Assembly: GCA_002269645.1 (NCBI GenBank)
Contig: NIVC01000151.1
Location: forward strand, 62,001-126,000
Source of the DNA: Macrostomum lignano
Lineage: Eukaryota
Length of the DNA: 64,000 nt
Reading direction: 5' to 3'
A program made the position numbers and the translations under genes. The notes beneath the pieces are model-generated. The model saw only the letters and a program-made list of their open reading frames with translations, was not told where the DNA came from and did not search any database. Shown in pieces: positions 24,926 to 59,984 of this stretch (the stretch's first letter is position 1; each line of letters begins with the position of its first letter).

Positions 24926-25724
24926 CAGATTACGAGTACAGCCTATGCACAGACTAATACAGACTGAGTCTACCAGTCTGTGTGCAAAGCTGCACCCTGC
25001 TGCGGTGCGGGTCAGTGCAAATATGTATGAATATCGCTACACAGGTAACACAGCAAATATACACGATGCTGTCCGCCTCATGCTGCCCTGCATCCCCCTT
25101 CGCTCCATCGCTGTTTTGAGTGATAAGCAAATGCCCGCCCGGCTTAACTCCTTTATAATTCTTGAAAAGCCGCGCTGACCTCATCAATCAGGCTATGCAA
25201 ATTTTGGTTTGATTTGTCATAAAACAGCCAAGTCCGAACCGAGTGCTCGGGCCGGTGCTGGCCGGAGGGCTCGGTTGAATTTCAAGCAGTAAACACGAGA
25301 GAGCAGCTGCTCACAGCAGTGTATTTGGAATCTGTTATCATCATCATGTGCATCAAATCAATGAGGCACTTGGAGCAGTGACTATTATTATTATATTATA
25401 TGGAAAATGCAGCGAATAACAGCCAGATGAATAAAGCAAATCAGGAGCACGCGGCATTGCATTCACAGCTGTGAATCTGGCAAGCGTAATTTAGATTTGG
25501 ATTGACTATTAAGTCTGGTTATAGTGATATTACATAAAAATTCTGCTCATTAAGGACTTGAACAATAAATTGCGATCACAGTGATACTTATACAATATAC
25601 ATGCATATTCGGATCAATATAGGAATATTATAATCCAATCTGGGCATACTCGAATAAGGGCATTATTGCCAGCGTGCTTTATAATTTTTTCTGGTCATAG
25701 CGGCCGTATTAGGAATTCTAGTCA

Positions 25725-25850
25725 AAGCGGTCATATCATGATATCAGGAATTCTGGTCATAGCGGTCATATCAGGAATTCCGGTCATAGCGGTCATATCA
25801 GGAATTCCGGTCATAGCGGTCATATCAGGAATTCCGGTCATAGCGGAACT
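25725..25850. repeat. 27-bp minisatellite
   Basis: (ATCAGGAATTCCGGTCATAGCGGTCAT)n. Confidence 0.85.
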
Positions 25851-25975
25851 AAATCACAAATTCTGGTCATAATGGGAGTGAATCACAAACTCCGGTTACA
25901 TTAAGATGAACTGATGAATTCTGGTCATAATGAGCTCTGATAGCAGCAGGTGAGACAGCAACGCTCGCCGGGCCG

Positions 25976-27292
25976 TCAGCCGGACGCGGGCAGCTCGACC
26001 TGGAAGGCGGCCAGCAGGAAGCGGTAGCGCGGCAGCCGCAGCCTCTCCGGCGCCATCGCCACCCGCAGCAGGCAGCCGCGCTCCGGCTGCAGGCCCGACA
26101 GCCGGTGGACGCTGCCGGCCCGGCCGCCGCCCGGCCACTTCGGCATCGGCGTCAGCGCGTCGACGCCGCTGCTGTTGAGCTCGGCGAAGGCGACGCAGGG
26201 CCACAGGCGGATCAGCGGTGCGGGGTAGCCAGTGTAACCCACCAGGCAAGTCGCCAGCACCAGCAGCTGCTGGGAGCCGCCCGGAGCCCCGTCTGCGGCC
26301 GGAACGGCATCCAGGCAGAGGTCCACTGCGACGCGGTCGGGCTCCACTAGCACGGGACCGCGCGGGTGCTGGCCGGACAGCAGGTAGCGGAGGACGCGCA
26401 GACGGGGAATTGCGCGCCTGAGCTCGGCGACGCAGGCGGCCAGGTGCTGCGCTGACCAGTCCAGTAGCGCCTGCGGCTGCGGCCAGGTAGGGCAGCTCAG
26501 GCCGAAGCTGGGCGACTGGAAATTCGAAATTGGGCGGCAGGGATTGTCACTCCGCCAATCAGACTGTCACTCGGGCAACCAGACTGTCACTCGGCAAATA
26601 TCAGACTGTCACTCCGCCAATCAGACTGTCACTCGGGCAACCAGACTGTCACTGCAGTTACGAGCTCAATGGAAGGCCATTTCCAACGCAACCCACTCGC
26701 AGCCTTTCAGAATCCTCACCAGTCCAGATGCGCTGAAAGGCGCCCCTGCGCGCAGCAGCAGCAGGACGGTTGCTTGGCAACCGGACGCCAGCGCCAGACG
26801 CAGCGCAGGCTGACGCGGACGAACGCCGTGGCCCAGCAAGACGGCGCAGCTCACGACGGCGCCGGCCTCCGCAGCCGCCATCAGCGCAGCTTCGCGCCCC
26901 TCCTCGGTGGGCGGCGGCGTCAGCGACAGCAGCAGCTGGTGGCAGACTCCGGCCAGGCCGCGGCCGGCCGCCTCAGCCAGCAGGGCGTCCGCCTCCTTCG
27001 AGTCGGCTGCGACCGCGCCTTCCAGCAGAAGGCGGCTGAGTAGCGCCGCATCATCGGCGGCAACGGCCTCCGACAGCGACTTGATCGACTGCGACGTCGT
27101 TGGCGGCAGCGGCGGTGGTGGCAGTTGGCGGCAGGCACCCGGCCAGGTGCGGCAGTGCAGGTCGGCCACCGCCCACTCGCAGAGGCCCTCGACGGAGACC
27201 GCCATTGGCGACGTCCCGGCGCGCCGCAGAACGTCGGCGCAGCAGCAGGCCCGGCTGGCGTCATCGACAGACTCGTCGGCGGGTGACTGGGA
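25976..27292 (-). CDS. Ankyrin-repeat-like hypothetical protein: exons 27292-26720 and 26515-25976
   Basis: Two GC-rich open exons joined in phase 0 (CTG|GTGAGG ... TTTCCAG|TCG). Ankyrin-like helices include ALLAEAAGRGLAGVCHQLL, ALMAAAEAGAVVSCAVLLGHG and ALRLALASGCQATVLLLLRAGA. First in-frame ATG is at 27205. Confidence 0.6.
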
Positions 27293-27314
27293 CTGCGGAG
27301 AGAGCGGCGGAGTC

Positions 27315-27690
27315 TTTGTTCTGGTGAATATGTGACTGGTGCACTGCGGTCTTTGTTCTGGTGTGAGCCTGGGCACTGGTGAATATGTGACTGGTGCACT
27401 GCGGTCTTTGTTCTGGTGTGAGCCTGGGCACAGTTGAATATGTGACTGGTGCACTGTGGTCTTTGTTCTGGTGTAATCTTGGGCACTGGTGAATATGTGA
27501 CTGGTGCACTGCGGTCTTTGTTCTGGTGTGAGCCTGGGCACTGGTGAATATGTGACTGGTGCACTGCGGTCTTTGTTCTGGTGTGAGCCTGGGCACTGGT
27601 GAATAAGTGACTGGTGCACTGCGGTCTTTGTTCTGGTGTGAGCCTGGGCACTGGTGAATAAGTGACTGGTGCACTGCGGTCTTTGTTCTG
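27315..27690. repeat. 55-bp minisatellite
   Basis: TGTGACTGGTGCACTGCGGTCTTTGTTCTGG... recurs every 55 bp. Confidence 0.95.
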
Positions 27691-28059
27691 GAGGACTTAC
27701 TGAATAAGCGACTGATTAGAATTGGATTGAAAAACTAAATTGAACAAGTTGGTCTAAGTTGATGGTATATTTTTTTCTACTAAAATTAAGGTGAAAATGA
27801 AAAATTGAAGGTGAACCGCATTTATAAAAATTGGAAATCAGCTCCGGTCTTATCGATATCAAACAGTCCAGAAAACTCAACTCACAAAGAAGCCATGTAG
27901 GAGACAGGACTCAAATTTAATATCAAATCTCCGAGTGAATTTAAGCAGTGCGCATTGGGCCAATCATTCTAAAGCATTTCTCAGAACACAATTTTGAAGA
28001 AAACGTCAAAAACTTAAACGGATTCATCCTGACGATATAGAAACTCCAAACTGCCAGAT

Positions 28060-28225
28060 CTCACCCCAATCAGATGGGAACTTCAAAATCTCACCCAATC
28101 AGATGGGAACTTCAAAATCTCACCCCAATTACATAGGAACTTCAAAATCTCACCCCAATCACATAGGAACTTCAAAATCTCACCCCAATCAGATGGGAAC
28201 TTCAAAATCTCACCCCAATCAGATG
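28060..28225. repeat. 30-bp minisatellite
   Basis: (CACCCCAATCAGATGGGAACTTCAAAATCT)n. Confidence 0.85.
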
Positions 28226-28384
28226 GGAACTTCAAAATCTCACCCTTTTAAGAGAGTTGACTTAAAGATCTCATCAAAATCTCGACCCCCAGATAAATCA
28301 AGCATCAAAATCAAAGCCCGATCAGGATAAGAATCGTTTAAATCTACGCGGACACAGAAGTCTTGTCAGTGGAAGGTCAGCAGC

Positions 28385-29810
28385 CTAGAACAGGCGCGGC
28401 ACCAGCAGGGGAGTCCGGCTCTCGTACTCCTGGTAGGCGGGGTCGGAGCCCCAACGCTTCCTGGCCGCGGCCTCCAGCAGCGGCAGGCCGGACACGAACA
28501 GCACCAGGCAGGAGTTCAGCACCGGCCCGGCCAGGCTCGCCCAGTGCAGCGGCCGGCTGAAGCTTGCGGAGGCGGAGGCGGCGAGGCCCGCCCACAGGCA
28601 CAGCTCGCCAAAGTAGTTCGGGTGCCGGCTGCGAGCCCACAGCCCGCTGGAGATGAAGCGCCTGGCGTTGTCCGGGTCGGACCTGAAGGCCAGCTTCTGC
28701 CAGTCGGCCACGGCCTCGATGGTCAGGCCGAAGCAGAACAGCGCCCAGCCCAGCTGCTCGCGCAGGCACACCGGACGGCGGGCCGCTGCGGCACCGGCGG
28801 CCGACATGCAGGCCAGAGCGGTGAGGGTTGGCGCCAGGTTGCCCAGCGCCCACGCGCCCTGCATGGTCCAGGCGGCTAGGAAGGCGCCCGGCTGAGTCTG
28901 GCGATGGGGAGATGCCGGTTGGGGATAATTAGAGTTGGGGATAATTAAGGATGGGATTAGGGTTCGGGGTGATTAGATTTGGGGATAATTAAGTGTAGGA
29001 TTAGGGTTCGAGATGATTAGAGTTGAGGATAATTAAGGATGGGATTAGGGTTCGGGATCATTAGATTTGGGGATAATTAAGGGTAGGATTAGGGTTCGAG
29101 ATGATTAGAATTGAGGATAATTAAGGATGGGAATAGAGTTCGAGATGATTAGAGTTGGGGATAATTAAGGATAGGATTAGGGTTCGGGATGATTAGAGTT
29201 GGGGATAATTAAGGATAGGATTAGGGTTCGGGATGATTAGAGTTGGGGATAATTAAGGATGGGATTAGGGTTTGGGATGATAAGGGTTGGGGATAATTAA
29301 GGAAGGGATTAGGGCTGGGGATGATTAGGGTTCGGGAGATTAGGGTTAGGGATATTAGGGTTGGGGAGATTAGGGTTAGGGATAATTAGAGTTGGGGATG
29401 ATTAGGACCCCAATTAAGCTGGGGCTTGATTTGATTAGTTTGATATCATTGGAATTCAGGTAGATAATAAGACGTTTAAGCGAAATTAGGAAACAGGTAG
29501 TTAATATACACCACCTGAACTATGCCCTCACCTTGATCCGGTTGAATCGGCGGTCACCGGAGCGCAGGCCGCGGTAGCCCAGGAAGCATCCCAGCCGAAG
29601 GGTCCACAGGCCGGCCATGCAGACGGGCGCCCAGCCGCGCAGCCCAACTGGAGGGAACAGCCGCTTGGTGGCGAATCCCAGCAGGGCGAGGTGGGTGACA
29701 GCTCCGGCGATGTCGTAGAATTTCTCGGTGCCCAGGTAGTAGGCCACGGGAAAGCAGGCCCACTGGATCCCCATGCTGAGGCCTGTCAGCTTGATAACTG
29801 CGTTACCCAT
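28385..29810 (-). CDS. DUF1295 / steroid 5-alpha-reductase-like membrane protein: exons 29810-29532 and 28897-28385
   Basis: MGNAVIK..YYLGTEKFYDIAG..LWTLRLGCFL..GDRRFNRIK|TQPGAF..WTMQ..EAVADWQKLAFR..FISSGLWARSRHPNYFGELCLW..SGLPLLE..KRWGSDPAYQEY are DUF1295 hallmarks. Phase-0 GT-AG intron. Confidence 0.88.
28920..29410. repeat. Degenerate telomere-like (TTAGGG-containing) intronic minisatellite
   Basis: Repeats of GGATTAGGGTTCGGGATGATTAGAGTTGGGGATAATTAA. Confidence 0.85.
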
Positions 29811-29854
29811 TGCGGAGCTCAGGTGGGACAGCAGGAGGTGGGAAGGGAAAGTTT

Positions 29855-30200
29855 TATGGCTGATAGTGGCGAGTGTACATTGGGGGAGGGGCTGAGTGGC
29901 TGATAGTGGCGAGTGTACATTGGGGGAGGGGCTGAGTGGCTGATAGTGGCGAGTGTACATTGGGGGAGGGGCTGAGTGGCTGATAGTGGCGAGTGTACAT
30001 TGGGTGAGGGGCTGAGTGGCTGATAGTGGCGAGTGTACATTGGGGGAGGGGCTGAGTGGCTGATAGTGGCGAGTGTACATTGGGTGAGGGGCTGAGTGGC
30101 TGATAGTGGCGAGTGTACATTGGGGGAGGGGCTGAGTGGCTGATAGTGGCGAGTGTACATTGGGGGAGGGCTGGGTGGCTGATAGTGGCGGGTGTACATG
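29855..30200. repeat. 40-bp minisatellite upstream of the DUF1295 gene
   Basis: (GGCTGATAGTGGCGAGTGTACATTGGGGGAGGGGCTGAGT)n. Confidence 0.95.
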
Positions 30201-30719
30201 GGGGGATGGTCCGAGTGGATCGGACTGGCAGAATAAAAGCAACACAGATAAGGTGGCGAAATCCGATAAGGAAGCGATGCTGGAGTCGGCGCGAGACGCC
30301 ACATCGTGGATCCGTTTATTTGAGATTCTTGCCGACCTGTGTATACGAGTAAAAGGCAAAAATAAAAATACACTGTAGGCTGGGAATCACACAGTGCCTT
30401 AAATCTGTCTGGCTGCTAATGTCTGATAGTGCAAAGTACATTATGAATGAGATAAGTATATTGTATAAGTACAAAGACTCACGCACAGTCAGTCTTGTTC
30501 ACAGGTAGTTTAATCGAATTTATACTATTGTCAGTATTGAATGCCGCAAGAATGCAAAACTACTGACGCAACAGCTGCTAATGACACCATAGTTAAAAAT
30601 TGGTAAACTACTGACAGTAGACGCGTCGAATTTTAACAATAATATACGACAAAAACAACTATAAATTTTTAAAAAAAAATTTAGATCTGAGCGATTCGCG
30701 TCGCTTCAACTTGACTTCA

Positions 30720-30850
30720 TGGTCCTTCACTCCCTCAGCCACACCCTCACCACCAACCCCATGATCCTTCACTCCCTGAGCCGCACCCTCACCACCAACC
30801 CCATGATCCTTCACTCCCTGAGCCGCACCCTCACCACCAACCCCATGATC
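30720..30850. repeat. 42-bp repeat, about 3 copies, just 3' of PPM1K
   Basis: ATGATCCTTCACTCCCTGAGCCGCACCCTCACCACCAACCCC. Confidence 0.85.
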
Positions 30851-30934
30851 CCTCTCAGGGCAACGGACCAGCCCCTAGAAGTAAGCAATTGTTCAGAGCA
30901 GCAGAAGCAAGCAGAGCCGGCAAGCAGGGGCAGT

Positions 30935-33508
30935 TCAGCTGGAAGTGAAGCGGTTAGCCAGGAAGTTGCGGCCCATGGAGTAGGGCATGCAGCTCATCTG
31001 CTTGGCGTACTTGCCCCAGGAGCCGAACGGTAGGATCACCGCCGTGGTGTTGTCCTCGCTGCCGAACTGCATCGCCTGGTCAACGATGATCTCGGCGGCC
31101 TCCTGCGGCGTGGCGCAGGTCGACGCGATGTCCACCATCTCCTTGACGCTCATCACGAAGGCCACTCCGTCTGTCACCAGCAGCAGGAAGGCGTCGCGGC
31201 CGTGCCGAACCTCCAGACAGCGCAGGTGGGGCTGCGCCGTCACGCCGAAGGGCTTCATCTCGCAGTCTCCGATGGACCTGCGGATGGGGCAAAGTCGGAG
31301 GGGCGGATCAGATCTACATGTAAAAAGGGGGGCGGATCAGATCTACATGTAAAAAGGGGGGCGGATCAGATCTACATGTAAAAAGCAGTGGCGTAGGGAG
31401 GGGGGGGATCAGGGGGGATGTATCCCCCCCCGAAGAGCCTGACCAAAACTTTTTTGTTGCACTTTTTCGCTATACATGCTACCATGTGAGCACTTTTACC
31501 TTGGTGTATCCCCCCCCGTAGGAAATTCACCTTGGTGTATCCCCCCCCGTAGGAAATTCCTGGCTACGCCCCTGGTAAAAAGGGGGGCGGATCAGATCTA
31601 CATGTAAAAAGGGGGGCGGATCAGATCTACATGTAAAAAGGGGGGCGGATCAGATCTACATGTAAAAAGGGGGGCGGATCAGATCTACATGTAAAAAGGG
31701 GGGCGGATCAGATCTACATGTAAAAAGGGGGCGGATCAGATCTACATGTAAATGGGGGCGGATCAGATCTACATGTAAAAAGGGGGGCGGATCAGATCTA
31801 CATGTAAATGGGGACGGATCAGATCTAGATAGGGGCGGATCAGACACAGGTAGAGGCGGATCAGACACAGGGAGAGGCGGATCAGACACAGGTAGAGGCA
31901 GATCAGACACAGGTAGAGGCGGATCAGACACAGGTAGAGGCAGATCAGACACAGGGAGAGGCGGATCAGACACAGGATCAGACACAGGAGATCAGACATG
32001 GTCAAAGGCGAATCAGAATGCCCCAACCTCACCTGGTCATGCTGAGGCGGCCGTTGACCACGGGGTTGCCTAGACTGTTGGAGGTGACGACCCCGCCGCG
32101 GGCGTGAATGCGGGCCTGCTCCTCCTCCAGGGCGGGGTCGTGGTCCACCGACAGCAGCTCAGGCCGGCCGGAGCGGCACAGCACCGCTTTGGAGTCGCCG
32201 ACGTTGGCCACAGCCAGTTCGGTGGAGTTGCGCAGCAGGCAGACGGTGGCGGTGGAGCCGCTGGCGAAACGACCGGCCTGGCCGCTGCTGAGCCGCTGCA
32301 GGTGACGCTGGAACAGGTTGTTAGCCTCCACGAAGGAGCGGCGGAGCGCCACGTCCAAGCGCGGCTGCTGGCGGCACCAGAAGTGCGCGAGGTCCGGCAG
32401 GCGCTCCACCAGGAAGTCGGCGGCCGCAGCGTCGCCGTGACCGTCGAATATCCCGATGAACAGCAGGTTCTCCTGGGTGCGGCAGGGAGATTATCTGTAG
32501 CGATCTCCCACATTGCAAGCTGAAGTATCCGAACACTTCAATACGGGTTGGGGGAACCTGAAGACAGGGAGGTTACGGGCTGGGGGGACCTGAAGACGGA
32601 GGTTACGGGCTGGGGGGACCTGAAGACGGAGGTTACGGGCTGGGAGGACCTGAAGACAGGGTGGTTACGGGCTGGGGGGACCTGAAGACGGAGGTTACGG
32701 GCTGGGAGGACCTGAAGACAGGGTGGTTACGGGCTGGGGGACCTGAAGACAGGGAGGTAACGGGTTGGGGGAACCTGAAGACGGAGGTTACGGGTTGGGG
32801 AAACCTGAAGACAGGGAGGTTACGGGCTGGGGGGACCTGAAGACGGAGGTTACGGGCTGGGGGGACCTGAAGACAGGGAGGTAACGGGTTGGGGGAACCT
32901 GAAGACAGGGAGGTTACGGGCTGGGGGGACCTGAAGACAGGGAGGTTACGGGCTGGGGGAACCTGAAGACAGGGAGGTTACGGGCTGGGGGGACCTGAAG
33001 ACAGGGAGGTTACGGGCTGGGGGAACCTGAAGACGGAGGTTACGGGAAGCTGAAAGACCCGAATAGAACAGCGCACCTGCAGGTCTTTGTACACCAGCCG
33101 GTCCTCCTGGTACTGGCGCCGGCCCTGGGAGGTGCAGCTGCCGACATACTGGCAGGTGATGCGCGGCACCAACTTGCCCTGCCGCATGCTCTGCTGCTCC
33201 AGGATGGGATAGTTGATCCGCGTCTTCCAGCTGCCCAGCCCCATCAGCGAGTTGGTGAGCAGCCGAGTCGACCGGACGCCATCAGGCGAGGGGGCAGCGC
33301 CGACCGCAGCGGCTGCTGCGTCCGAGGCGGCGGCTGCGGCGGCCGCCGGCGACTGTCGGCGGGGGCGGCGCTGAGGCTCGGCCGGGGCGGGAGTGGCAGC
33401 GGGCGCGGATGAGGATGACGAAGAGCTGCCAGCAAGTCGGCGCCGTGGAAGAAGCAAAGCCAGCTGGCGGAGGGCAGCGGCCAGCTGCTGCTGTTGAAGG
33501 GATTGCCG
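30935..33508 (-). CDS. PPM1K: Mitochondrial PP2C-family phosphatase (BCKDH phosphatase-like): exons 33508-33077, 32472-32033, 31277-30935
   Basis: LGSWKTRINYPIL..GKLVPRI..GRRQYQEDR, IFDGHG, SGSTATV, ANVGDSKAVLCR, NSLGNPVVNGRLSMTRSIGD, LVTDG and QFGSEDNTTAVILPFGSWGKY match PPM1K as recalled. Introns are in phase 0 and 2. No in-frame ATG for the first 88 codons. Confidence 0.92.
31300..31990. repeat. 30-bp then 21-bp minisatellites in PPM1K intron 2
   Basis: (AAAAAGGGGGGCGGATCAGATCTACATGTA)n followed by (ATCAGACACAGGTAGAGGCGG)n. Confidence 0.9.
31386..31574. mobile_element. hAT-family MITE with perfect 8-bp TSD
   Basis: GTAAAAAG|CAGTGGCGTAG...CTACGCCCCTG|GTAAAAAG, inserted inside the 30-bp array. 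Confidence 0.9.
32545..33045. repeat. About 31-bp minisatellite in PPM1K intron 1
   Basis: (GGGGACCTGAAGACAGGGAGGTTACGGGCTGG)n with variants. Confidence 0.9.
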
Positions 33509-33549
33509 CTGCAAGAGTGAGGGGTGAGCTTCAGGTTGACGGCTTTTGA

Positions 33550-34015
33550 GGCAGACTCAGGGACTGATCAGGGATTGAGTGGACAGGTAGACTCAGGGAC
33601 TGATCAGGGATTGAGTGGACAGGCAGACTCAAAGACTGATCAGGGATTGAGTGGACAGGCAGACTCAGGGACTGATCAGGGATTGAGTGGACAGGTAGAC
33701 TCAGGGACTGATCAGGGATTGAGTGGACAGGCAGACTCTGGGACTGATCAGGGATTGAGTGGACAGGCAGACTCTGGGACTGATCAGGGATTGAGTGGAC
33801 AGGCAGACTCAGGGACTGATCAGGGATTGAGTGGACAGGCAGACTCAGGGACTGATCAGGGATTGAGTGGACAGGCAGACTCAGGGACTGATCAGGGATT
33901 GAGTGGACAGGCAGACTCAGGGACTGATCAGGGATTGAGTGGACAGGCAGACTCAAGGACTGATCAGGGATTGAGTGGACAGGCAGACTCAGGGACTGAT
34001 CAGGGATTGAGTGGC
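33550..34015. repeat. 33-bp minisatellite between TRMT12 and PPM1K
   Basis: (GACTCAGGGACTGATCAGGGATTGAGTGGACAG..)n. Confidence 0.95.
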
Positions 34016-34210
34016 AGTTTTAAATAAAAAACAAATGAAAGCATTATTTCATAGTGTAAAATATTTAAGGATGCATGAAGCATATATTTCAATTAAAATG
34101 CAAACAATTGCAAAAATTCGAGCATAATTAGAAAACCCACGCACTAATCAATCTACTATTAAAACTCAAAACGCCTGCTACGCTACTGACAGTAGGCAAA
34201 GCCGGTCGGG

Positions 34211-36009
34211 TCAGCCGGCCGGTCGGCACTCCACATCAAACACGAGATGCGCCACGCGGGGAGCGTACCATTTCACGAACTGGATGCGCGCCACTCTGAC
34301 GCGCCAGCCAGGCGGCATGTGGCGCCGAAGTTCGCGCGCCATCGAGGCGGCCATGGACAGCCAGGCCGGGTGCGGGCGCGACCGGCTGCAGACTGGTGGC
34401 GTCTCGGCCGCTTCCGCCAGCGGGTCCTCGTCGCAGTCAGCGGCGTCTGGCGGCGGCAGCTCCGCTGCAGGCGCATGCGGAGAGTTCAGGAAAGCCGCGT
34501 GTGCAGCGGCTGTTGCGGCGCGGTCTTTGTAGAAGCAATTAGAGGTGATTGCTAAGCCGCCAAAGGCGCCATCGCTGCTCCCGCGAACAGACAGGTCTTT
34601 GTCAGTTCTAGAAGCATCCTCGGAGTCTTTGTCGCTTCCATCAGCATTCGGATGGTCTTTGTTGCAGCCGGTCGCCTCCCTGGGCGAGTCGCAGTTCTCG
34701 TGCACGTGCAGCCAGCCGCCGGCGGGCCGCAGGCAGCGGCAGGCGGCTGGCCAGGACAGGCGGGAGCTGGGCACGAGGCCCAGGAGCACTCGGTCCGCCA
34801 GGCCGGCGGGCGCCACCAGCCGGTTGTCGCCCTGCAGGACGCGGCAGCGCGACTCGCCGATGCGATTGTTCTGCAGGTTGCGGCGCAGCCAGCGCAGGGC
34901 AGCCGGGTTCCAGTCGATGGCGATCACCTGGGCGATCCCGGTGCGGGCCAGCAGCGGCAGCGTGAAGTAACCGATGCCTGCCAGGGAGCCAGGGTGCGCA
35001 GGTGGTGCGGATACAAATGGAGGGATAACCTGAGGCTGTGGGAATGGGGATAACCTGAGGCTGTGGGAATGGGGATAACCTGAGGCTGTGGGAATGGGGA
35101 TAACCTGAGGCTGTGGGAATGGGGATAACCTGAGGCTGTGGGAATGGGGATAACCTGAGGCTGTGGGAATGGGGATAAACTGAGGCTGTGGGAATGGGGA
35201 TAACCTGAGGCTGTGGGAATGGGGATAACCTGAGGCTGTGGGAATGGGGATAACCTGAGGCTGTGGGAATGGGGATAACCTGAGGCTGTGGGAATGGGGA
35301 TAACCTGAGGCTGTGGGAATGGGGATAACCTGAGGCTGTGGGAATGGGGATAACCTGAGGCTGTGGGAATGGGGATAACCTGAGGCTGTGGGAATGGGGA
35401 TAACCTGAGGCAATGGGAATGGGGATAACCTAGTTAAGGCTGCGGGGATCGGGGCAACCTAAAGTTATAGCATAACTGAAGTCAGGAACGCCCTGATCTC
35501 ACCGGCAAACAGATCAACAATGCAGGACTCGCTGCCATCAGCAGCGGCCGCTGCCACCAGCGGCACCAGGCGATGCCTCTCGGCCGCGTTGCCCCGGCTG
35601 AACATGCAGTCGGCAATGTCCCAGGATAACGAGACTCCGTGCTCAACGCAGGTGGCCACGGTGGCGCTGGCGGGGTCGCAGCCGGGCTCGGTGTACAGCA
35701 AGCGGCTGCGCGAGCTCCGGACTCCATCGCGGGCGACGCGGCGAACGACGGCCAGCCGGCGAACTTTCAGTAAGCCGCAGACGGTCGGCCACAGCCGGCC
35801 CGAGGCGGCCAGCTCGGCGAAGCTGGGGTGGTCCAGGGTGCCCTCTGGGAACAGCGCCAGGTCGCCGTAGCGGCTGTAGCTGCGGGGCAGCTGCGCCAGC
35901 CAAGCCGGCTGGGGGGCCGCGCAGCCAGTGGCCTCAGCTGCTGCCGCCAGCAAGCTGTGGGCGAGCTGCTCACGCCAGGACTGCAGCGGGGATTTGGACC
36001 TTTGAGTGG
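34211..36009 (-). CDS. TRMT12: tRNA wybutosine-synthesizing protein 2 (Met10/Trm5-like SAM transferase): exons ~36009-35503 and 34977-34211, 5' end unresolved
   Basis: LPRSYSRYGDLALF, WDIADCMFSRGNAAERHR, IVDLFAG|IGYFTLP, IDWNPAA, QGDNR, ADRVLLGLVPSS..WP.AC..GGWLHVH and VKWYAPRVAHLVFDVEC match TYW2. Phase-1 GT-AG intron. Confidence 0.92.
35023..35435. repeat. 25-bp minisatellite in the TRMT12 intron
   Basis: (GGGATAACCTGAGGCTGTGGGAATG)n. Confidence 0.95.
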
Positions 36010-36029
36010 CTGCTTGGTTGTCAGGCAAC

Positions 36030-36515
36030 AGGGACAGGAATAGGAGCAATAACAGTGACAGGGACAGGGACAGGAATAGGAGCAATAACAGTGACAGGGA
36101 CAGGAATAGAAGCAATGACCGTGACAGGGACAGGGACAGGGATAGAAGCAATGATAGGGATAGGGATGGAGATATAAGCAATGACAGTGACAGGGACAGG
36201 GACAGGGATAGAAGCAATGATAGGGATAGGGATGGAGATATAAGCAATGACAGTGACAGGGACAGGAATAGAAGCAATGATGGGGACAGAGACAAGAATA
36301 GGAGCAATGACATGGACAAGGACAGGACAGGAATAGGAGCTATGAGAGTTACAGGGACAGGGATAAGAACAAGGTGGGGACAAGGATGGGTGCAGGAACA
36401 GAGACAAGGTGGACAAGGACAGGGATAAGGACAGAGATATGATAGAAACAAGGACAGGGATATGATAAAAACAAGGACAGGGATATGATAGAAACAAGGA
36501 CAGGGATAGGGACAA
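36030..36515. repeat. Purine-rich GACAGG/GATAGG-based minisatellite (related tract at 37160-37290)
   Basis: GACAGGGACAGGAATAGGAGCAATAACAGT-type units. Confidence 0.85.
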
Positions 36516-37859
36516 GGGTATTGTTTTGCCGTAGCTATGACTATGGCTATGGGATCCTATAGAAAATATAGTAAAATAGGTGCCTACGGCAACTATGGAT
36601 ACACCTACAGTAGCTAGCTGCTCTTATGGCTATGACTATAGAAATATGGTAGTTGCTGTCATATTCTGTAGATTCCCATAGCTATAGTTATTAATTTAAA
36701 AAAATTAAAAAATATTAGAAACACAAATAGGTAGAGTAAAACAAAGATACTTTGGTAAACTATATTATAGACTTAAAAACTTATAAATTATATCTAATAA
36801 AGTACAATAAAACATTAGCAAACTCTAACTTTTATTAATGTCAAAAAGTTCAGCAGTAGTACTTTTAATAGTGATTAAGTATCATTACTCTTTGTATAAA
36901 GATGAGTTATAATCTTATAAAGGCAACTGAGTGTTTGTTTTATTTTCTACCTTAATTTGCAGTTGTTTAAGTTCTAGGTTATCTTCGTGGTTCAAAATAT
37001 TTGTTTCTTAGACTTTTCTTAAAACTATAGCTAAGGCTATGGGAACTATAAGAATATAATAATATTGAGGTTTCTACAACTATGGAATATAGAAAATCGG
37101 AATAAGCCATAGTTTTGCTTATGGCTATGGCTATGGCACATGGACCCTCTTTATGGCAGAACACTAGACAAGGGCAAGGAAAGAAATAAAGACAAGCATA
37201 AGGATAGGGACACAGATAAGACAAAGATAAGCATAGGGATAGGGACACAGATAAGACAAAGACAAAGACAGAGACAAACACAAAGGTAGAGACAAATATC
37301 TTAGTCTAATTAAGAACATGAGCACTATCAGACGATCAGTATCACTTTTTGTTATGCAAAATGTTTTGCCTTGCATCAGGCATTGTCAGGCTCTTAAAAT
37401 TTAGTTACAATTTATTTGTTTATTTATTTATATTTAACAATTTAGACAAAAATGGGTTGGTAAAAGTTAGAAATGTATATATAGATTAACAGTAGATTGC
37501 ACAATCCAGCAGAGCACTCACAAAGTGCAATGAGGGGAGAGAGATAGAGAGAGAGGCTAGATATTTTTATTTTTTATTAATGAATAATAAATTATTTAAA
37601 AAAGAATATTTTATCTTTTCTAAATATTTCTAAAAAAAATTCTAAATATAATTCATTTATTAAGCCTACAAAGGTTGCTAATTGTATAAAAAGTTAGTGA
37701 TATAAAGATTGAAATAAAATTTTATTAAAGACTTAATAGATTGAAAAAGTAGGCCTACTTACTACCTGCTGGGCTAGGCTAGCTAGCAATATAATTGTTG
37801 CCTAGCCCAAATTCATTTAGTTTTCATATATTTAGGCCTAAACCTAGCCTTGTCCAGCT

Positions 37860-37982
37860 ATAATCGGCTTTCTTCAAGTTTCGTTCGTTTAATTCTAACA
37901 CCCACCCCCCACCACCCTTGAATAGAGGGCGAAATAATTCCGGAAATAATTAAACGAACGAAACTTGAAGATAGCCGATTAT
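37860..37982. mobile_element. Small MITE-like inverted repeat
   Basis: ATAATCGGCT..CTTCAAGTTTCGTTCGTTTAATT and AATTAAACGAACGAAACTTGAAG..AGCCGATTAT form arms of about 35 bp. No clear TSD. Confidence 0.6.
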
Positions 37983-40083
37983 CGGTATAGATTGATAGAT
38001 TGATATCGATATAGATTGCCCTATAATCTAACTATACTTCTAAATATACTTCATATCTAAGGTTTGCATGCTTTCTTGCTTGTACTATACTGTAAATAAA
38101 TGTTAATTAAATTTATAATATTAGGTCTCACTTCCCGTTCTAGGTCGATTTCTAAGAATGTGAAATTTAAAACAGATATCCTGAAATCGTGATATCTTAA
38201 TAGGACTGACAGAGTCATAGATGTCAAGTAAGAAACGGGGGGCTAGTGGAGCAATGCCTTTTGATGTTGGGGCTAGACATGCACCCATGCACGTTTATTA
38301 AAAAATCCTATATTTTCACTTCACCAGTCTATGCTTGGAAGCTTTATTTTGTCTTTCATTTATTACACGAATGCTTCTGGCCCCAAGCTTATCAAATCGT
38401 TTCTACTTCCATGTAAGGTGATTGTTCAAGTCGACCTTGGTCTTTTTTAGTCCTTATTTACAGGATCTTTAGCGTAGCTACAGACCGTAGCTTCATATTA
38501 TCTGCGGAAGTTCAGAGGTCAAATTTGAGAAATAACTGCATGGGAATTACTTTCTTGCATTTCACCTTTTTAAGCGATAGTTGGCCGTCGCCCGCGGCCA
38601 GCTTTAACCGAGACCGGCTCCACTACTATACCTCGCGGACCCAACGGCCCTCCCCGCGGGCCTGGACACGACGACGCTTGCGGGCCCGAAGAACATCCCC
38701 ATGGCTCATCATCCGCGGTTCCTTCAGGCTACTAAACCTCTGTCTTCACTACCTAGGACCACGCTGCAGACAGGTCTGGCGCAGAGACAACCCTGACCGG
38801 CCCCGCGCACAAGAATATGCACTTCCATTGATTAGCGGAATGGGCGACGCTCACCTCCCCGTTTGCGTCTTTTGACCGCGCCCTGCGGCTAAGTCAAATA
38901 AGTCAAGTAGCGTCAAATTAATTTTAGAACTTCTTTAAAAGAAAACAGCAATTCATCATTGATTCGATCATTTCTCGCGTCGGCCGTGCGAAAATTTTGA
39001 GTCAAGAAATCTAGTATACATGTACAGTACATGTGGCCGGTTCACTGTTGCTCGCCCCGGTCAGAAACCACCTCGATATATCAATAATTTTTACTCGTAA
39101 TTTAAATTTTTCATTTTTAAATCGATGAAATTTACTAGTTAGATGCATGGTTGTTTTTTTATTTCCGACCACATGTGCTGTTAATTCAGATTGAATCTTG
39201 AAGATGCATGCAAGTATGCCGACGGCGTCAGTGCAGCAAAAATAGTCTTTTGGCAATTTTTTATGAGGATGGCATGCGGCTAGATTTACGGGAGTTCACG
39301 AGGAAAATTTTGAAGGGAGGGGCAGATTACTAAGGTTACTTTTCCTTTGATTATTTATGTATTCGATAATGTATTGCCCATAGCTATAAAAAGTTTAAAA
39401 CAACAAACGCGCGTCCTTTGCGCCCCCTCACTAAATCCGCTACTATCGAGGCGCATGACTTGTTGCTGCAGTAGCGGGCAACTCGCAACAAACGAGGAGG
39501 AACTATAGTTGACTTTAAATTCCTATTCCATGTGATCCCTGAGCACAATTCAACGTAGGCAACAAGCACTGTGCACTGCCTAGGTGCACATGTACCCGGT
39601 ACAGCGGTCCTGATTTTCTCAAAGTCAGGCCAGGAATGCACACAGTCTTGAGGGCTAAATGGCCTTGCTCGGAAGTGAATCCCATAATGTCCGCGTGCAC
39701 GCACTCAAAATTGCTGCTTGCCGCGCTGAAGAAAATCCATGCCCAGGTACTTCGGAGCGAGAGTCAGCCTGCCGCGTACTTCCCGATATACCATAGGGCT
39801 ATATTCCCGCTCTTGTGACGGCGCTCGGCTGCTTAGGGATTGGAGCTAATTGTTACTCTTCTCTATTCCCTTGCGGACACGACTGTCAAGTTTTAGAGTC
39901 CTCAATGCCATCTCCCATATTCCCGCGCCAATAATTGCATTGCGTGCCCGAAATCCGCTGCTTCGCCTCTCGATCCTCATGCTAATTGAGCCTCTCAAAT
40001 ATTGAAACTCAGCCACAGCAGGCTGATTAGCAGCCGCTTGTGACCGACTTTCAGCGCCAAAGGCCAGGTGACGGAGCCGCCAG

Positions 40084-42616: not shown

Positions 42617-45600
42617 CCTCCCTTCTTTTACAAAAATGAACTTGCACACTCTAACAGTTCAGATGCACTCGCAAGTTCACTCCTTGTAGTTGACGCGGGA
42701 CTTCCCACACAGACGGCGACTTCTCCTGGGGCCCAACTCCTCAGGCGTCAGTTCCAGCCGACCAGGCGTCAGCAGCTGTTGATGCTGCTGTGAGGGCTGT
42801 GTTCCGGAGTCCTCGGGGGGTGGTGGTAGCGGTTGTAAGTCTTCAGAAATGACACAGGAGCTTCTGCCGACGTTCTGACTGCTGTCCGACGCTCGCGCCC
42901 CGGCGGCTTGGTCTGTGTCAGCCTCGGTGTTGATCTCTGCTGCTTAACTATCGACTTGCATGGGACTATGCCTCTGGAGTTGATCCAGGTGGGCCTTCTT
43001 GTACAGATCGGGCCCCACCTTGATAGTGGCCATGTTTGAACCCGTTGGGCAAACTAGTGAAGCTTCTTGAGCCCGTCGGCCGGCTTTGTAGATTAGATGC
43101 TCGCCGGGTGCCCAGGTTGGCCTATTGGAGAGCAGTGGTGCTCGGATCTTTCTGCCGAACAGCAGTTCTGCGGGTGATGCTCTGCTCTTCCCACCAGATG
43201 CTCGATAGAACAACAGGTAGCGATCGATAACTGCTTGACTGAGTCCGTTTGCTTTGATGGCCTCCTTAATTGTCCGCACGAAACGTTCCGCCAAACCATT
43301 ACTTTGAGGGTGGTACGCCGGCGTTGTGATCAAGTTGCCACCGACTTTTGTCAGCCATTGACGGGTCTCATCACTGACGAAGCTCGGGCCGTTGTCTGAC
43401 ACCAGCTGATTTGGTACCCCTAGTTGAGAGAACGTTCGTCGCAGCCTACTCACAACTGTTGATGATAGCATGTCTTTCGTCAAGTGTACCTCCGGATAGC
43501 CCGAGTAAGCATCCACCAGTATCAGAAGATAACTTCCTTCAATGGGTCCTGCGAAATCCATATGCACTCTCGTCCATGGTCCTTCCGGTTCGGGCCACGA
43601 GATCCTGAAATTTCTGTTCTGAGGCTTGGCCATTCTACAAACACTGCAGCTCCCGACCTGCAGTTCCACCATTTTGTCCATGCCTGGCCACCAGTAGCCC
43701 TCCCGAAGCAACGACTTGGTTCGTGCAATGCCGAGGTGCACACTGTGTGCTGCAGAGACCGCTCTACTCCTCAGCGTCACGGGGACAACCAGCTTGTTTC
43801 CTCGAATTACTAAGCCGTCCTGAGTAGAAAGTTCACCAGCTAAAGGTTTGTACGCTCTGACCTCATCTGTACGGAAACGTCCTGTCTGGATAGCGTCAAC
43901 TAGTTTCGTTAGTTCTTGACACTTCCGGCTGTGACACCTTAACTCCTGTAGACTCAGCAGAGTTCCTTCGCAGACAGGGGCGTGTCCGACATGGTGAGTG
44001 GTCGCTGTGTTCGTCGGTTTAACCAATCTCGATAGTGCGTCGGACTTCATCTCGGCCGATCTTCTGTACGTGATGGTGTAACTGTATCCAGAGAGCGTGA
44101 TAGCCCACCTCTGAAGACGCGCCGACACACGCTCTGGTAGCTGGCTGTCGTGGCCGAAGATGAAGGTGAGTGGCCTGTGATCTGTCAGCAGCGAAAACTC
44201 GCGTCCGAATAGAAACCGGTGACAACGACGGACCGCCCACACGATAGCCAGAGCCTCTCGCTCGATCTGCGAATACTTCTTTTCTGCTGGTGACAGAACC
44301 TTGCTGACGAATATTATTGGCACGCCTTCTTGACTAAGAACTGCTCCGATTGCGACTTGTGAAGCATCACACTCAAGTTCAAGCTGCTTACTTGGGTCAT
44401 AGGTCGCCAGCATGGTCTCTTCAGTCAGGGCCGCCTTGATCCTTTGGAAGGCGGATTCTTCTGCGTTAGTCCACACGAACTCGCTATCCTTCCGCCTCAG
44501 CCTTGATAAAGGCTCGATCAGTTCAGCCAGATTTCTAATGAATCGACCGGAGAAGTTTATCATTCCTAGAAACGATTCCAGTTCGGCGATGCTTTTCGGA
44601 GCTGTCATCTCCCGGATGGCTCGAACTTTCTCCTCACTTGGCTTTATTACGCCAGATTCTAAGATGAAGCCCAGAAAGTGCACACGGTTCTTCGCCAACT
44701 GGCATTTAGACTCGTTGATCTTGAGCTTGTAGCATGCCAGCTGCTTTCTGACCGCCGACTCTCGTTGATTGAGCTCTTGCTTCGTTCGGCCGCCAATCAG
44801 GATATCGTCGACATACGCCACGGCCCCCGGGATGCCTAGAATCACCTCGGAGATAAACCGCTGGAAAATTGATGGCGCTGTTTTGATGCCGAAGACTAAC
44901 CGATTGAAGCGAAAATTCCCGAACGGGGTGGCCATCACTGTCAACTCCTTTGATGTTTCATCCAGCTCTATTTGATGGTACGCCTTCTTCAGGTCCAAAA
45001 TAGAGTAGAAATGACAACCGGTGACAGCTGAAAAAGCCTCCTCTGGGGTTGGCGATGGGTAACTGTCGTTCACAAGCTGAGGGTTTACTGTTTGCTTGTA
45101 GTCTACGCACAGTCGAATACCGCCATCTGACTTCTGGATGAGTACAATAGGAGACGCCCAGTTAGAGAACTTCACGGGTTCAATTATTCCGTCCCTCAGA
45201 AGCTCATCAAGTTCTGATCGAAGCTTGTACTTTAAAGCAAACGGAACTGAGCGTGCTTTCATGTACCTCGGTGTGGCGTCATCCTTGAGCTGTAGATGCG
45301 CCTTGAACCTGGTCTGAGCGTCGATCTCGGGCATCTCCTGTCCGGAATCCAGCACATGTGAGTGTCCAATCGATATTGCCTCCAGGTCAATGTGCACTAC
45401 ATCTCGCCCCAATAAGGCGAAGCTTCTGTTGGATGCCACAACATGGAACGTGACTTGAATCGGACCACCGTTCCAGACAGCTTGTAGCTCGAGTTGGCCT
45501 AGAAGGTCGAACTTATGGTCGTCCGTGTAGCCAATCAGTACAGCTTCACTGGGTTGCAGCCGCGGCTTACCCAAACTTCTCCACAAGCTGCTCGACATGA

Positions 45601-45910
45601 CAGATACAGTGGCCCCCGTATCGAGTTGACACTGAATCTGCCTGCTTTTACCCTTGACGGAGCACGGCAGCTGGATGGTCGGACAGGATCCTCCTCTGGT
45701 TGAGAGGGTGTTCGCGATCGCCAGGACATCTGCCGTCAGCACGTCTTCAGTCTTCGCTACGTGGTGTTGACTTCTGACTTTGGATCTGCACTGCTTTTCA
45801 AAATGGTTCGGCTTACCGCACTTGCGACAGGTTTTGCCGATGGCTGGACACTCTGATTTATTTGATCCACATGTGCATTTATAGTCCACAGATGCATTCA
45901 GATTCAGCAA
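42511..45910 (-). mobile_element. Ty3/gypsy LTR retrotransposon, 5'-truncated, with near-intact gag(end)-pol ORF 45910-42944
   Basis: One frame carries the zinc knuckle CRKCGKPNHFEKQC, protease LDTGA, RT YVDD, RNase H CDAS..EREALAIVWA..TDHRPL and integrase HSVH..CSVC, HMDFAGP, SDNGP, SNGLAERFV. A TAA at 42946-42944 is followed by 88 open codons ending RRSRR..NYKE*. Confidence 0.95.
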
Positions 45911-46285
45911 AGCAACAGAAAGCGCAGGTGACGCAGGTGCAAGTGGGGAAAAAACTGAATCTCAGTGAATTCAACGGTCTTTTCACTTAGCTTTTTTTAA
46001 AAAACTTGTGAGTTACTAGCTGTCACGAACTTTGCTCCGAGGGCTTCCAATATGTAGCCAGCGTAATTGGATAGCTTAAATAATTTTGATTGGGCAAGCA
46101 CAGCGGCCTCATGTCCGAAATGAGCGCAAAGCTGCTTCAACGTCCATCATCAATCCGGAGCGTAGTATGAGAGAAGCAAAATCGCCACTGTGAGGGCGGC
46201 CACCGCCATGCGGTAAAGAAAATACCACAGCCGCAGGGCCATCAGCTCTTCACAGATGATGTGTTCCTTATTACCCGACTTTCGA

Positions 46286-59819: not shown

Positions 59820-59984
59820 GTGAGTCTCGGGCCGCTGCACTGCCGGTTTTTTCTAGAATTGAATTTTTCCTCATAAAACCCAGACCCAGAGTGACGAGTC
59901 TCAGTTGCCGTCCCGGCAGACATTCAAGGCTTGGTATTAATAATCATTATTTGAGAGGGTAGAGCCAACTGGGGGTAACGCTAA

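What the first reader, a model, noticed from the sequence alone, without database searches (positions are those of the whole stretch)
33244..33530. PPM1K has no start codon for its mitochondrial presequence: candidate spliced-leader-donated AUG
Seen: the first exon is open for 88 codons before its first in-frame ATG (33244). It begins at a good 3' splice site (CTCACCCCTCACTCTTGCAG|CGG at 33508) in phase 0. The 702 bp back to the TRMT12 stop contain no ATG-bearing exon with a consensus donor. Adding one Met gives MRQSLQQQQLAAALRQLALLLPRRRLAGSSS, which is Arg/Leu/Ala/Ser-rich with no acidic residues, like a mitochondrial presequence. Known: PPM1K is a matrix enzyme, and flatworm spliced leaders end in AUG that can serve as the initiator (shown in Schistosoma). 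Inference: targeting of this enzyme depends on trans-splicing.
Basis: partly seen in the sequence, partly recalled or inferred. Interest (0 to 1): 0.7.

Follow-up and report, generated by a model that had tools for sequence, protein, structure and literature searches.

The report
Flatworm PPM1K borrows its start codon
In the flatworm Macrostomum lignano the gene for the mitochondrial phosphatase PPM1K has no start codon of its own for its import signal and almost certainly takes the AUG from the spliced leader added by trans-splicing, a mechanism already known in flatworms and shared by two neighbouring genes.

Summary
The window is Macrostomum lignano (Mlig_3_7, NIVC01000151.1:62001-126000). 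PPM1K lies on the minus strand. Its exon 1 starts at 33508 after ctcactcttgcag and runs 88 codons before the first in-frame ATG (33244). The 702-nt spacer holds no usable ATG exon.

M. lignano has a single 35-nt spliced leader ending in ATG, and 33508 is the only site in the spacer that fits its trans-splice acceptor motif YTNCAG. Public gene models agree:
- UniProt A0A1I8JGS7 (404 aa) starts at exactly this codon without a Met.
- The NCBI models are flagged "partial".

A diverged genomic copy differs from the window at six sites in the extension. Five are third positions of this frame (pN/pS 0.23). With a leader Met, the N-terminus looks like a mitochondrial presequence.

The gene sits in an operon-like, same-strand cluster. 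Two neighbours, TYW2 and an unnamed gene, have the same start-less layout.

No leader-containing read could be inspected, so the junction itself is inferred. Leader-donated AUGs were shown in Schistosoma in 2006 and are noted for Macrostomum. This is therefore a well-supported new example of a known mechanism. It is useful mainly as an annotation fix and as a clean test case.

The parts
34211..34213 (-). Stop codon (TGA) of the upstream same-strand gene TYW2/TRMT12
   Evidence: The protein is 100% identical to M. lignano UniProt A0A1I8JGH1.
34015..34210 (-). Unique A+T-rich spacer that presumably holds the TYW2 3'UTR. It contains all five ATGs of the intergenic region, none followed by a usable exon.
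   Evidence: The ORFs are 2-27 codons long, and the only phase-0 GT donor is TTT|GTTTTT at 34032.
33549..34014 (-). 36-bp minisatellite (12.9 units) filling most of the spacer (the outron). Copy number is 38.9 and 3.8 in the two other genomic copies.
   Evidence: Acceptor-like sites inside the units are out of frame and do not fit YTNCAG.
33509..33545 (-). Unique end of the outron: a polypyrimidine tract and the 3' splice site ...ctcacccctcactcttgcag. The last 37 nt are identical in all three genomic copies.
   Evidence: It is the only match to the M. lignano trans-splice acceptor motif [T/C]TNCAG in the region.
33434..33508 (-). Codons for residues 2-26 of the predicted presequence, (M)RQSLQQQQLAAALRQLALLLPRRRL. 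The predicted R-3 processing site is RRL|AG. The initiator Met is not in the genome.
   Evidence: 5 basic and 0 acidic residues in the first 30, hydrophobic moment 0.60, two TOM20-type motifs, R-3 motif; phase 0.
33245..33433 (-). Remainder of the ATG-less N-terminal extension (low-complexity Ser/Ala/Pro linker, codons 26-88)
   Evidence: substitutions between genomic copies fall on third positions of frame 0. SPDG aligns with the DPEN motif of orthologues.
33242..33244 (-). First in-frame genomic ATG, two codons before the conserved LGSW motif. Its context is poor (C at -3).
33077..33508 (-). PPM1K exon 1 (144 codons). The donor is CAG|gtgcgc, with GT at 33076-33075.
   Evidence: The model is identical to UniProt A0A1I8JGS7.
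32032..32472 (-). PPM1K exon 2 (147 codons, PP2C core ENLLFIGIFDGHGD...SMTR)
30935..31276 (-). PPM1K exon 3 (113 codons plus the stop at 30937-30935)
35605..35980 (-). TYW2 exon start with the same layout: acceptor ccgctgcag|TCCTGG in phase 0 and 125 codons to the first in-frame ATG, which lies inside the conserved domain
   Evidence: All public TYW2 models lack a Met or are flagged partial.
27205..27292 (-). Fourth gene of the cluster (unnamed, 367 aa) with the same layout: acceptor ctctctccgcag|TCCCAG in phase 0 and 29 codons to the first in-frame ATG
   Evidence: GC3 is 0.83 from the first codon.

Best explanation
PPM1K of Macrostomum lignano is a downstream gene in an operon-like, same-strand cluster (TYW2, PPM1K, DUF1295, an unnamed gene).

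Proposed mechanism:
1. The 35-nt spliced leader is trans-spliced to the acceptor at 33508.
2. The leader ends in AUG and the acceptor is in phase 0, so the mature mRNA reads ...UUGCAUG|CGG CAA UCC... The leader AUG is the first AUG, has G at -3, and opens the reading frame.
3. Translation gives a 405-aa protein. Its first 26 or so residues (MRQSLQQQQLAAALRQLALLLPRRRL|AG) act as a cleavable mitochondrial presequence.
4. Without the leader, the first in-frame AUG (33244) would give a protein starting two residues before the conserved mature region, with no presequence.

What is shown and what is inferred:
- Shown here: the sequence layout, the species, the coding frame of the extension, and the agreement of public gene models with the junction.
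- Taken from the literature: M. lignano has one leader ending in ATG, and flatworm leader AUGs can initiate translation.
- Inferred: that this particular junction carries the leader, that the leader AUG is the start used, and that the product is imported into mitochondria.
For: Species and leader:
- M. lignano is identified.
- Its leader is a single 35-nt sequence ending in ATG. The acceptor motif is [T/C]TNCAG, and 30% of genes are trans-spliced (PMC8629364).

Junction at 33508:
- It is the only YTNCAG site between the TYW2 stop and Met-33244, and no upstream ATG exon exists.
- UniProt A0A1I8JGS7 (4 identical entries) begins with RQSL, exactly at 33508.
- The fused model A0A1I8JFU2 has its junction ...HLVFD|RQSLQ at the same base.
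- NCBI PAA89411.1 and PAA48369.1 are 'partial' in the same frame, starting 21 and 12 nt further in.
- The 37 nt before the acceptor are identical in a copy that differs at four sites within the 23 nt just upstream of that stretch.

Frame of the extension:
- Five of six substitutions against copy L003 are at codon position 3 (p=0.018).
- Four are synonymous and two are not; pN/pS is 0.23, against 1.95 and undefined (no synonymous change) in the other frames.

Targeting:
- The first 30 residues have 5 basic and no acidic residues, and the first acidic residue is at position 45.
- There is an amphipathic Leu/Ala/Arg segment and an R-3 site, RRL|A.
- Jointly these features occur in 1.2% of shuffles and are absent from the other frames.
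- Orthologues have 75-135 residues before LGSW.

Operon context:
- The spacer of 702 nt minus 466 nt of minisatellite leaves 236 nt. The published criterion is a repeat-adjusted distance under 1 kb, with a mode near 100 bp.
- Minisatellite copy number varies from 3.8 to 38.9 between copies.
- Fused public models suggest polycistronic precursors.

Generality:
- TYW2 and the fourth gene start at phase-0 acceptors with 125 and 29 ATG-less codons.

Precedent:
- In S. mansoni the leader AUG is in frame in 28% of trans-spliced mRNAs, and more than 40 cDNAs need it (Cheng et al. 2006, quoted).
Against: - No leader-containing read or cDNA for this junction could be examined. The M+404-aa protein is not in the 15-billion-protein collection. 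Neither the gene name nor the locus tags appear in the paper supplements that were searched, each term in some of those papers only.
- GC3 in the extension is 0.60-0.77, against 0.93-1.0 in the rest of the exon and 0.80-0.97 at the start of the neighbouring genes. A codon-usage score does not prefer frame 0 there.
- All three frames are open, so openness alone is uninformative.
- The NCBI model starts are 12-21 nt inside the exon rather than at the acceptor. Why is not known.
- The comparison between copies rests on six substitutions, and copy L003 carries a premature stop.
- Presequence scoring used hand-made features, not TargetP or MitoFates.
Confidence: 0.8

Rival explanations
1. The 264 nt before Met-33244 are a 5' leader region. 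Translation starts at the genomic AUG at 33244, either on a capped transcript or by leaky scanning past the leader AUG. The protein then has no classical N-terminal presequence: it is cytosolic, or it is imported through an internal signal.
For: GC3 drops to 0.47-0.87 in the extension and rises sharply to 0.93-1.0 about 13 codons before Met-33244. All three frames are open there. The codon-usage score does not favour frame 0.
Against: Substitutions between genomic copies fit coding in frame 0 (pN/pS 0.23; 5 of 6 at position 3). The Met-33244 form begins two residues before the conserved LGSW motif, whereas all orthologues have 75-135 residues before it. Met-33244 has C at -3. In the window copy an out-of-frame ATG at 33282 precedes it. 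If the leader is added at 33508, its AUG comes first and is in frame.
Confidence: 0.1
2. A conventional first exon with its own ATG lies further upstream, inside or beyond TYW2, and is cis-spliced to the acceptor at 33508. It was missed by all annotations.
For: The acceptor at 33508 is a good general 3' splice site. One public model (A0A1I8JFU2) joins it in cis to a point inside the last TYW2 exon.
Against: No ATG exon with a usable donor lies in the 702-nt spacer. The fused model uses the non-consensus donor GAT|GTGGAG and would make a TYW2-PPM1K fusion with an internal presequence. It also skips a premature stop in that copy, which points to a gene-predictor artefact. Four identical UniProt entries and two NCBI models show no upstream exon.
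Confidence: 0.05
3. Translation starts at a near-cognate codon on an unspliced or differently spliced RNA, for example the in-frame TTG at 33514 two codons before the acceptor. Alternatively, the missing ATG is an assembly error.
For: TTG at 33514 is in frame and 16 codons are open upstream of the acceptor.
Against: The region from 37 nt upstream of the acceptor through the first 11 codons (nearest in-exon difference is codon 12) is identical in three independently assembled copies, so an assembly error is unlikely. The TTG lies inside the polypyrimidine/acceptor signal, which splicing would remove. Nothing here supports UUG initiation.
Confidence: 0.03

Closest known systems
[quoted passage not shown]
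   Same: It is a flatworm leader ending in AUG. The acceptor is in frame with the ORF, and no genomic AUG covers the conserved N-terminus. The leader supplies the initiator Met.
   Different: The species is different: a free-living macrostomid with a different 35-nt leader. Here the donated Met heads a mitochondrial presequence. Initiation at the leader AUG has been shown experimentally for Schistosoma but not for this gene or species.
M. lignano leader trans-splicing and operons (Ustyantsev and Berezikov 2021, PMC8629364; Wudarski et al. 2017, PMC5730564)
   Same: The acceptor fits YTNCAG. The gene is a conserved same-strand neighbour at a repeat-adjusted distance under 1 kb, and minisatellites inflate the intergenic spacers, exactly as described.
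   Different: In the passages read here, those papers do not discuss the leader AUG as a start codon. The resulting annotation lists such genes as 5'-partial.
Vertebrate PPM1K/PP2Cm, the mitochondrial matrix phosphatase of the branched-chain ketoacid dehydrogenase complex
   Same: It has a PP2C domain, a conserved LGSW..R...PI segment before the domain, and an N-terminal extension of similar length carrying a basic presequence. The function is from my own knowledge of the family.
   Different: In the 11 orthologues aligned, and in vertebrate PPM1K to my knowledge, the initiator Met is encoded in the gene. The M. lignano protein has DGHGD where relatives have DGHGG.
Alternative trans-splicing that sets mitochondrial or cytosolic location in trypanosomes (for example Trypanosoma brucei isoleucyl-tRNA synthetase; recalled from memory, not checked here)
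   Same: The choice of trans-splice site decides whether a presequence is translated.
   Different: In trypanosomes the AUGs are genomic and the leader adds none. Here the leader itself would provide the only AUG in front of the presequence.

Membership tests
PPM1K (PP2Cm) orthologue | PP2C catalytic domain (PF00481) | tested here: met
   PF00481 is precomputed on the NCBI product of this gene and on all top hits.
PPM1K (PP2Cm) orthologue | Closest named relatives are PPM1K rather than other PP2C subfamilies | tested here: met
   The named top hits are 'protein phosphatase 1K, mitochondrial-like' or unnamed PP2C-domain proteins at 45-52% identity, and none carries another subfamily's name. The full HMMER scan finds nothing closer than 47% over a full-length match.
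PPM1K (PP2Cm) orthologue | Conserved pre-domain segment (LGSW.nR...PI) and invariant catalytic residues | tested here: inconclusive
   The LGSW segment and most invariant columns are present, but the motif DGHGG reads DGHGD. The effect on activity is unknown.
PPM1K (PP2Cm) orthologue | Location in the mitochondrial matrix | not testable with these tools
   Only presequence-like features could be scored.
Leader trans-spliced gene of M. lignano | 3' acceptor at the start of the first exon, with no cis donor upstream | tested here: met
Leader trans-spliced gene of M. lignano | Acceptor motif [T/C]TNCAG | tested here: met
   TTGCAG|CGG is the only match in the spacer.
Leader trans-spliced gene of M. 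lignano | Leader-bearing reads or cDNAs at the junction | not testable with these tools
   No M. lignano reads are reachable. Indirect support only: gene models start or join exactly at 33508.
Leader-AUG-dependent ORF (slORF) | The leader ends in AUG directly before its donor site | tested here: met
   From the literature...TTGCATG followed by GTAAG in the leader RNA gene.
Leader-AUG-dependent ORF (slORF) | The leader AUG is in frame with the conserved ORF, which stays open | tested here: met
   Phase 0, with 88 open codons up to Met-33244. The frame is supported by substitutions between genomic copies.
Leader-AUG-dependent ORF (slORF) | Initiation at the leader AUG is observed (reporter, ribosome profiling or N-terminal peptide) | not testable with these tools
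   Shown only for S. mansoni in the literature.
M. lignano operon (criteria of PMC8629364) | Adjacent same-strand genes at a repeat-adjusted distance under 1 kb, with the downstream gene trans-spliced | tested here: inconclusive
   The distance criterion is met: 702 minus 466 leaves 236 nt. Trans-splicing of the downstream gene is inferred. Fused models hint at polycistronic precursors.
Cleavable mitochondrial presequence | Basic, non-acidic, amphipathic N-terminus with a processing-peptidase motif | tested here: met
   5 basic and 0 acidic residues, hydrophobic moment 0.60, RRL|A site, joint null 1.2%. The features were hand-made; TargetP and MitoFates were not run.

The most novel reading that the evidence does not exclude
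In M. lignano the spliced leader may be an obligatory start-codon donor for whole operons. Three of four consecutive genes here have lost their own initiator. If so, translation start is hard-wired to trans-splicing, and for nuclear-encoded mitochondrial proteins such as PPM1K so is organelle targeting. This could explain a large share of the 'partial' coding sequences in the public annotation. A regulated choice between the leader AUG and Met-33244 could also give mitochondrial and cytosolic isoforms.
Probability: 0.35. Interest if true: 0.5.

Novelty: new member of a known kind. Interest (0 to 1): 0.3.

Why it matters
- Annotation. Public M. lignano models of this gene and its neighbours are Met-less or flagged partial. 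Fused models even caused the PPM1K proteins to be clustered under TYW2, which hid them from a homology search. Adding the leader AUG at phase-0 trans-splice sites would complete these coding sequences and correct predictions of where the proteins go.
- Biology. This is a clean case in which a mitochondrial import signal can be translated only after trans-splicing. M. lignano can be made transgenic, so the role of a flatworm leader AUG could be tested directly in vivo.
- Limits. It opens no new principle. The mechanism has been known since 2006.

Tried and rejected
- Homology search with the full protein and an exhaustive HMMER scan found no Macrostomum PPM1K. That wrongly suggested the gene was unannotated. 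The entries were hidden as members of the TYW2 cluster and only appeared through the listing of cluster members.
- Rfam found nothing in the window, and no leader RNA gene lies in the window.
- Exact look-ups found nothing for the last-exon ORF, for P0056, or for the M+404, Met-33244 and M+TYW2 forms.
- Supplements of three M. lignano papers hold neither the gene name nor the locus tags, though not every term was tried in every paper. Wasik et al. 2015 is not held.
- A codon-usage score was confounded by the Leu/Ala/Arg-rich composition and did not identify the frame. I replaced it with the comparison between genomic copies.
- I considered a hidden frameshift, or an alternative acceptor at gaag|CTC that would serve frame +1. 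I rejected both: that frame has pN/pS 1.95, no basic residues in its first 30, and no YTNCAG site.
- Acceptor-like sites inside the minisatellite units are out of frame and lead into stops.
Full report
**What is there.** The feature lies on the minus strand.
- After a 36-bp minisatellite (33549-34014, 12.9 units) come 40 unique bases ending in ctcacccctcactcttgcag.
- An exon begins at 33508 with CGG CAA TCC.
- The frame is open for exactly 88 codons before its first ATG at 33244. The nearest upstream in-frame stop is 16 codons before the acceptor, with no ATG between them.
- The exons are 33508-33077, 32472-32032 and 31276-30938, with the stop at 30937-30935. Together they encode a 404-aa PP2C protein.
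- Its best named relatives are 'protein phosphatase 1K, mitochondrial-like' from molluscs, a nemertean and a priapulid, at 45-52% identity.
- The upstream same-strand gene is TYW2/TRMT12, with its stop at 34213-34211, which leaves 702 nt of spacer.
- The spacer has five ATGs, all followed by stops within 2-27 codons. The only phase-0 GT donor is TTT|GTTTTT. The species' donor consensus is GT[G/A]AG.

**Which organism.**
- A chimeric query made of the two neighbouring genes hit Macrostomum lignano UniProt entries at 100% and 93% identity.
- The NCBI locus recovered from a cluster member is 100% identical to window 24935-39487.
- The window is therefore Mlig_3_7 contig NIVC01000151.1, bases 62001-126000.
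- M. lignano trans-splices about 30% of its genes to a single 35-nt leader, CGGTCTCTTACTGCGAAGACTCAATTTATTGCATG. In the leader RNA gene this is followed by GTAAG. The motif at trans-splice acceptors is [T/C]TNCAG (PMC8629364).
- The site at 33508 (TTGCAG|) fits that motif. It is the only fit between the TYW2 stop and Met-33244.

**Public annotation agrees, and was hidden.** Neither my homology search nor the exhaustive HMMER scan returned a Macrostomum PPM1K. The reason is a clustering artefact: fused gene models pulled the PPM1K proteins into the cluster whose representative is TYW2. The members are informative:
- UniProt A0A1I8JGS7 (4 identical entries, 404 aa) begins RQSLQQQQ. This is exactly the first codon after the acceptor, there is no Met, and it is identical to my model.
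- The fused model A0A1I8JFU2 places an exon junction (...HLVFD|RQSLQ) at the same base.
- NCBI PAA89411.1 (this contig) and PAA48369.1 are flagged 'partial'. They start 21 and 12 nt inside the exon, in the same frame.
- No model has an upstream exon or a start codon.
- A transcript end or junction falling exactly after an AG with a strong polypyrimidine tract is what leader-trimmed or soft-clipped cDNA evidence would produce. This is an inference about how those models were made.

**Is the extension really coding?**
- Openness alone says little. All three frames are largely open in this 74% G+C stretch.
- GC3 is 0.47-0.87 in the extension, against 0.93-1.0 in the conserved part of the exon. 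A codon-usage score did not pick frame 0. That score is confounded by the Leu/Ala/Arg/Gln-rich composition.
- The assembly holds three copies of the locus. Copy L003 differs from the window at six sites in the 264-nt extension. Five are third positions of frame 0 (p=0.018). Four are synonymous, and the other two are Leu to Phe and Pro to Ala.
- pN/pS is 0.23 in frame 0, 1.95 in frame +1, and undefined (no synonymous change) in frame +2. There are no indels.
- The 37 nt before the acceptor are identical in all copies, although four differences fall in the 23 nt just upstream of that stretch.
- Orthologues carry 75-135 residues before the conserved LGSW motif, which begins two residues after Met-33244. 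The SPDG just upstream aligns with their DPEN motif.
- Taken together, the extension is translated in the frame that the leader AUG would open.

**Presequence.** With a Met added, the N-terminus is MRQSLQQQQLAAALRQLALLLPRRRLAGSSS.
- The first 30 residues contain 5 basic and no acidic residues. The first acidic residue is at position 45.
- 13 of the 30 are Leu or Ala, and the maximal helical hydrophobic moment is 0.60.
- There are two TOM20-type motifs, and an R-3 processing motif RRL|AG that predicts cleavage after residue 26.
- The joint occurrence of no acid plus at least 5 basic residues, an equal or higher moment, and an R-3 site is 1.2% in composition-matched shuffles. The other two frames have 0-1 basic residues.
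- These are hand-made features. TargetP and MitoFates were not available.

**Context: an operon-like cluster with the same layout repeated.**
- TYW2, PPM1K, a DUF1295 protein and an unnamed 367-aa gene follow each other on the minus strand.
- The published operon criterion is a repeat-adjusted distance under 1 kb, with a mode near 100 bp. The authors note that repeats inflate operon spacers.
- Here 702 minus 466 nt of minisatellite leaves 236 nt, which includes the TYW2 3'UTR.
- The minisatellite has 12.9, 38.9 and 3.8 units in the three copies. The spacer length is therefore unconstrained, and little unique sequence is left for a promoter.
- Fused public models (TYW2+PPM1K+DUF1295 and PPM1K+DUF1295) fit the polycistronic precursors reported for about 7% of assembled transcripts.
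- TYW2 starts at ccgctgcag|TCC (35980) in phase 0, with 125 codons before its first in-frame ATG, which lies inside the conserved domain.
- The fourth gene starts at ctctctccgcag|TCC (27292) in phase 0, with 29 ATG-less codons. Both have GC3 of 0.80 or more from the first codon, and all their NCBI models are 'partial'.
- DUF1295 has its own ATG 7 nt after its acceptor. A leader AUG there would open only a 5-codon overlapping ORF.

**Comparison with what is known.**
- Reported flatworm leaders end in AUG with few exceptions (PMC12582326).
- In S. mansoni the AUG is in frame in 28% of trans-spliced mRNAs, and more than 40 cDNAs need it for correct initiation (Cheng et al. 2006, quoted in PMC9851317).
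- The mechanism is therefore known, and its presence in this genus is already anticipated.
- Added here: a specific, well-supported case in which the donated Met heads a mitochondrial presequence, and the observation that three of four genes in one cluster share the layout and are consequently mis-annotated.

**What is missing.**
- No leader-containing read, cDNA or peptide could be examined.
- Gene names and locus tags were not found in the supplements searched.
- The low GC3 of the extension remains unexplained. So does the 12-21-nt offset of the NCBI model starts.

**Verdict.** This is a new member of a known kind. Interest is modest (0.3).

Noticed in passing
window 35605-35980 (minus strand): TYW2/TRMT12 has the same start-less layout. 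Its acceptor ccgctgcag|TCCTGG is in phase 0, and 125 codons precede the first in-frame ATG, which lies inside the conserved domain. All public models lack a Met or are flagged partial.
   Followed up: partly
window 27205-27292 (minus strand): The fourth gene of the cluster (367 aa, no Pfam hit on record) also starts at a phase-0 acceptor, ctctctccgcag|TCCCAG, with 29 ATG-less codons. The NCBI models in all three genomic copies start 3-9 nt inside the exon.
   Followed up: partly
window 29803-29817 (minus strand): DUF1295 has its own ATG at 29810, 7 nt after a putative acceptor (cccacctgag|CTCCGCAATGG). A leader AUG joined there would be out of frame and open a 5-codon ORF (MLRNG*) that overlaps the real start.
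   Followed up: no
L003 (NIVC01000514.1) about 10630; equivalent to window 33127: The third genomic copy of PPM1K carries a premature stop (CAG to TAG at codon 128 of exon 1). NCBI annotates only a 116-aa product there, and the fused UniProt model skips the stop. This copy is probably a decaying duplicate in this neopolyploid genome.
   Followed up: partly
window 33549-34014; L002 4547-5948; L003 10061-10205: The 36-bp minisatellite in the TYW2-PPM1K spacer has 12.9, 38.9 and 3.8 units in the three genomic copies. Introns and the other spacers of the cluster are filled with similar 25-44-bp arrays.
   Followed up: partly
protein cluster of P0056: Fused gene models (1072 aa and 680 aa) caused the M. 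lignano PPM1K and DUF1295 proteins to be clustered under a TYW2 representative. Searches that score only representatives therefore miss them. This is a trap for homology searches in this database.
   Followed up: yes
window about 32430-32445 (minus strand; residue 159 of the leader-AUG form): The near-invariant PP2C motif DGHGG reads DGHGD in all M. lignano copies. Whether the enzyme is fully active is unknown.
   Followed up: no
window 33280-33282 and 33241-33245 (minus strand): An out-of-frame ATG at 33282 opens a 13-codon ORF whose stop overlaps Met-33244 (cTGATGg). A synonymous GAT to GAC change removes this ATG in copy L003, so it is probably not functional.
   Followed up: partly
window 33300-33508 (minus strand): GC3 of the N-terminal extension (0.47-0.87) is well below that of the rest of the exon (0.93-1.0) and of the first codons of the neighbouring genes (0.80-0.97). 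The reason is unexplained.
   Followed up: partly
window 42947-45961 (minus strand): A 1005-aa open frame has a CCHC zinc knuckle near its start and looks like the gag-pol of a retrotransposon. It was not analysed further.
   Followed up: no
window 59203-59820 (plus strand): An open frame ends in ...[30 protein letters not shown], which looks like the start of a T-box DNA-binding domain.
   Followed up: no
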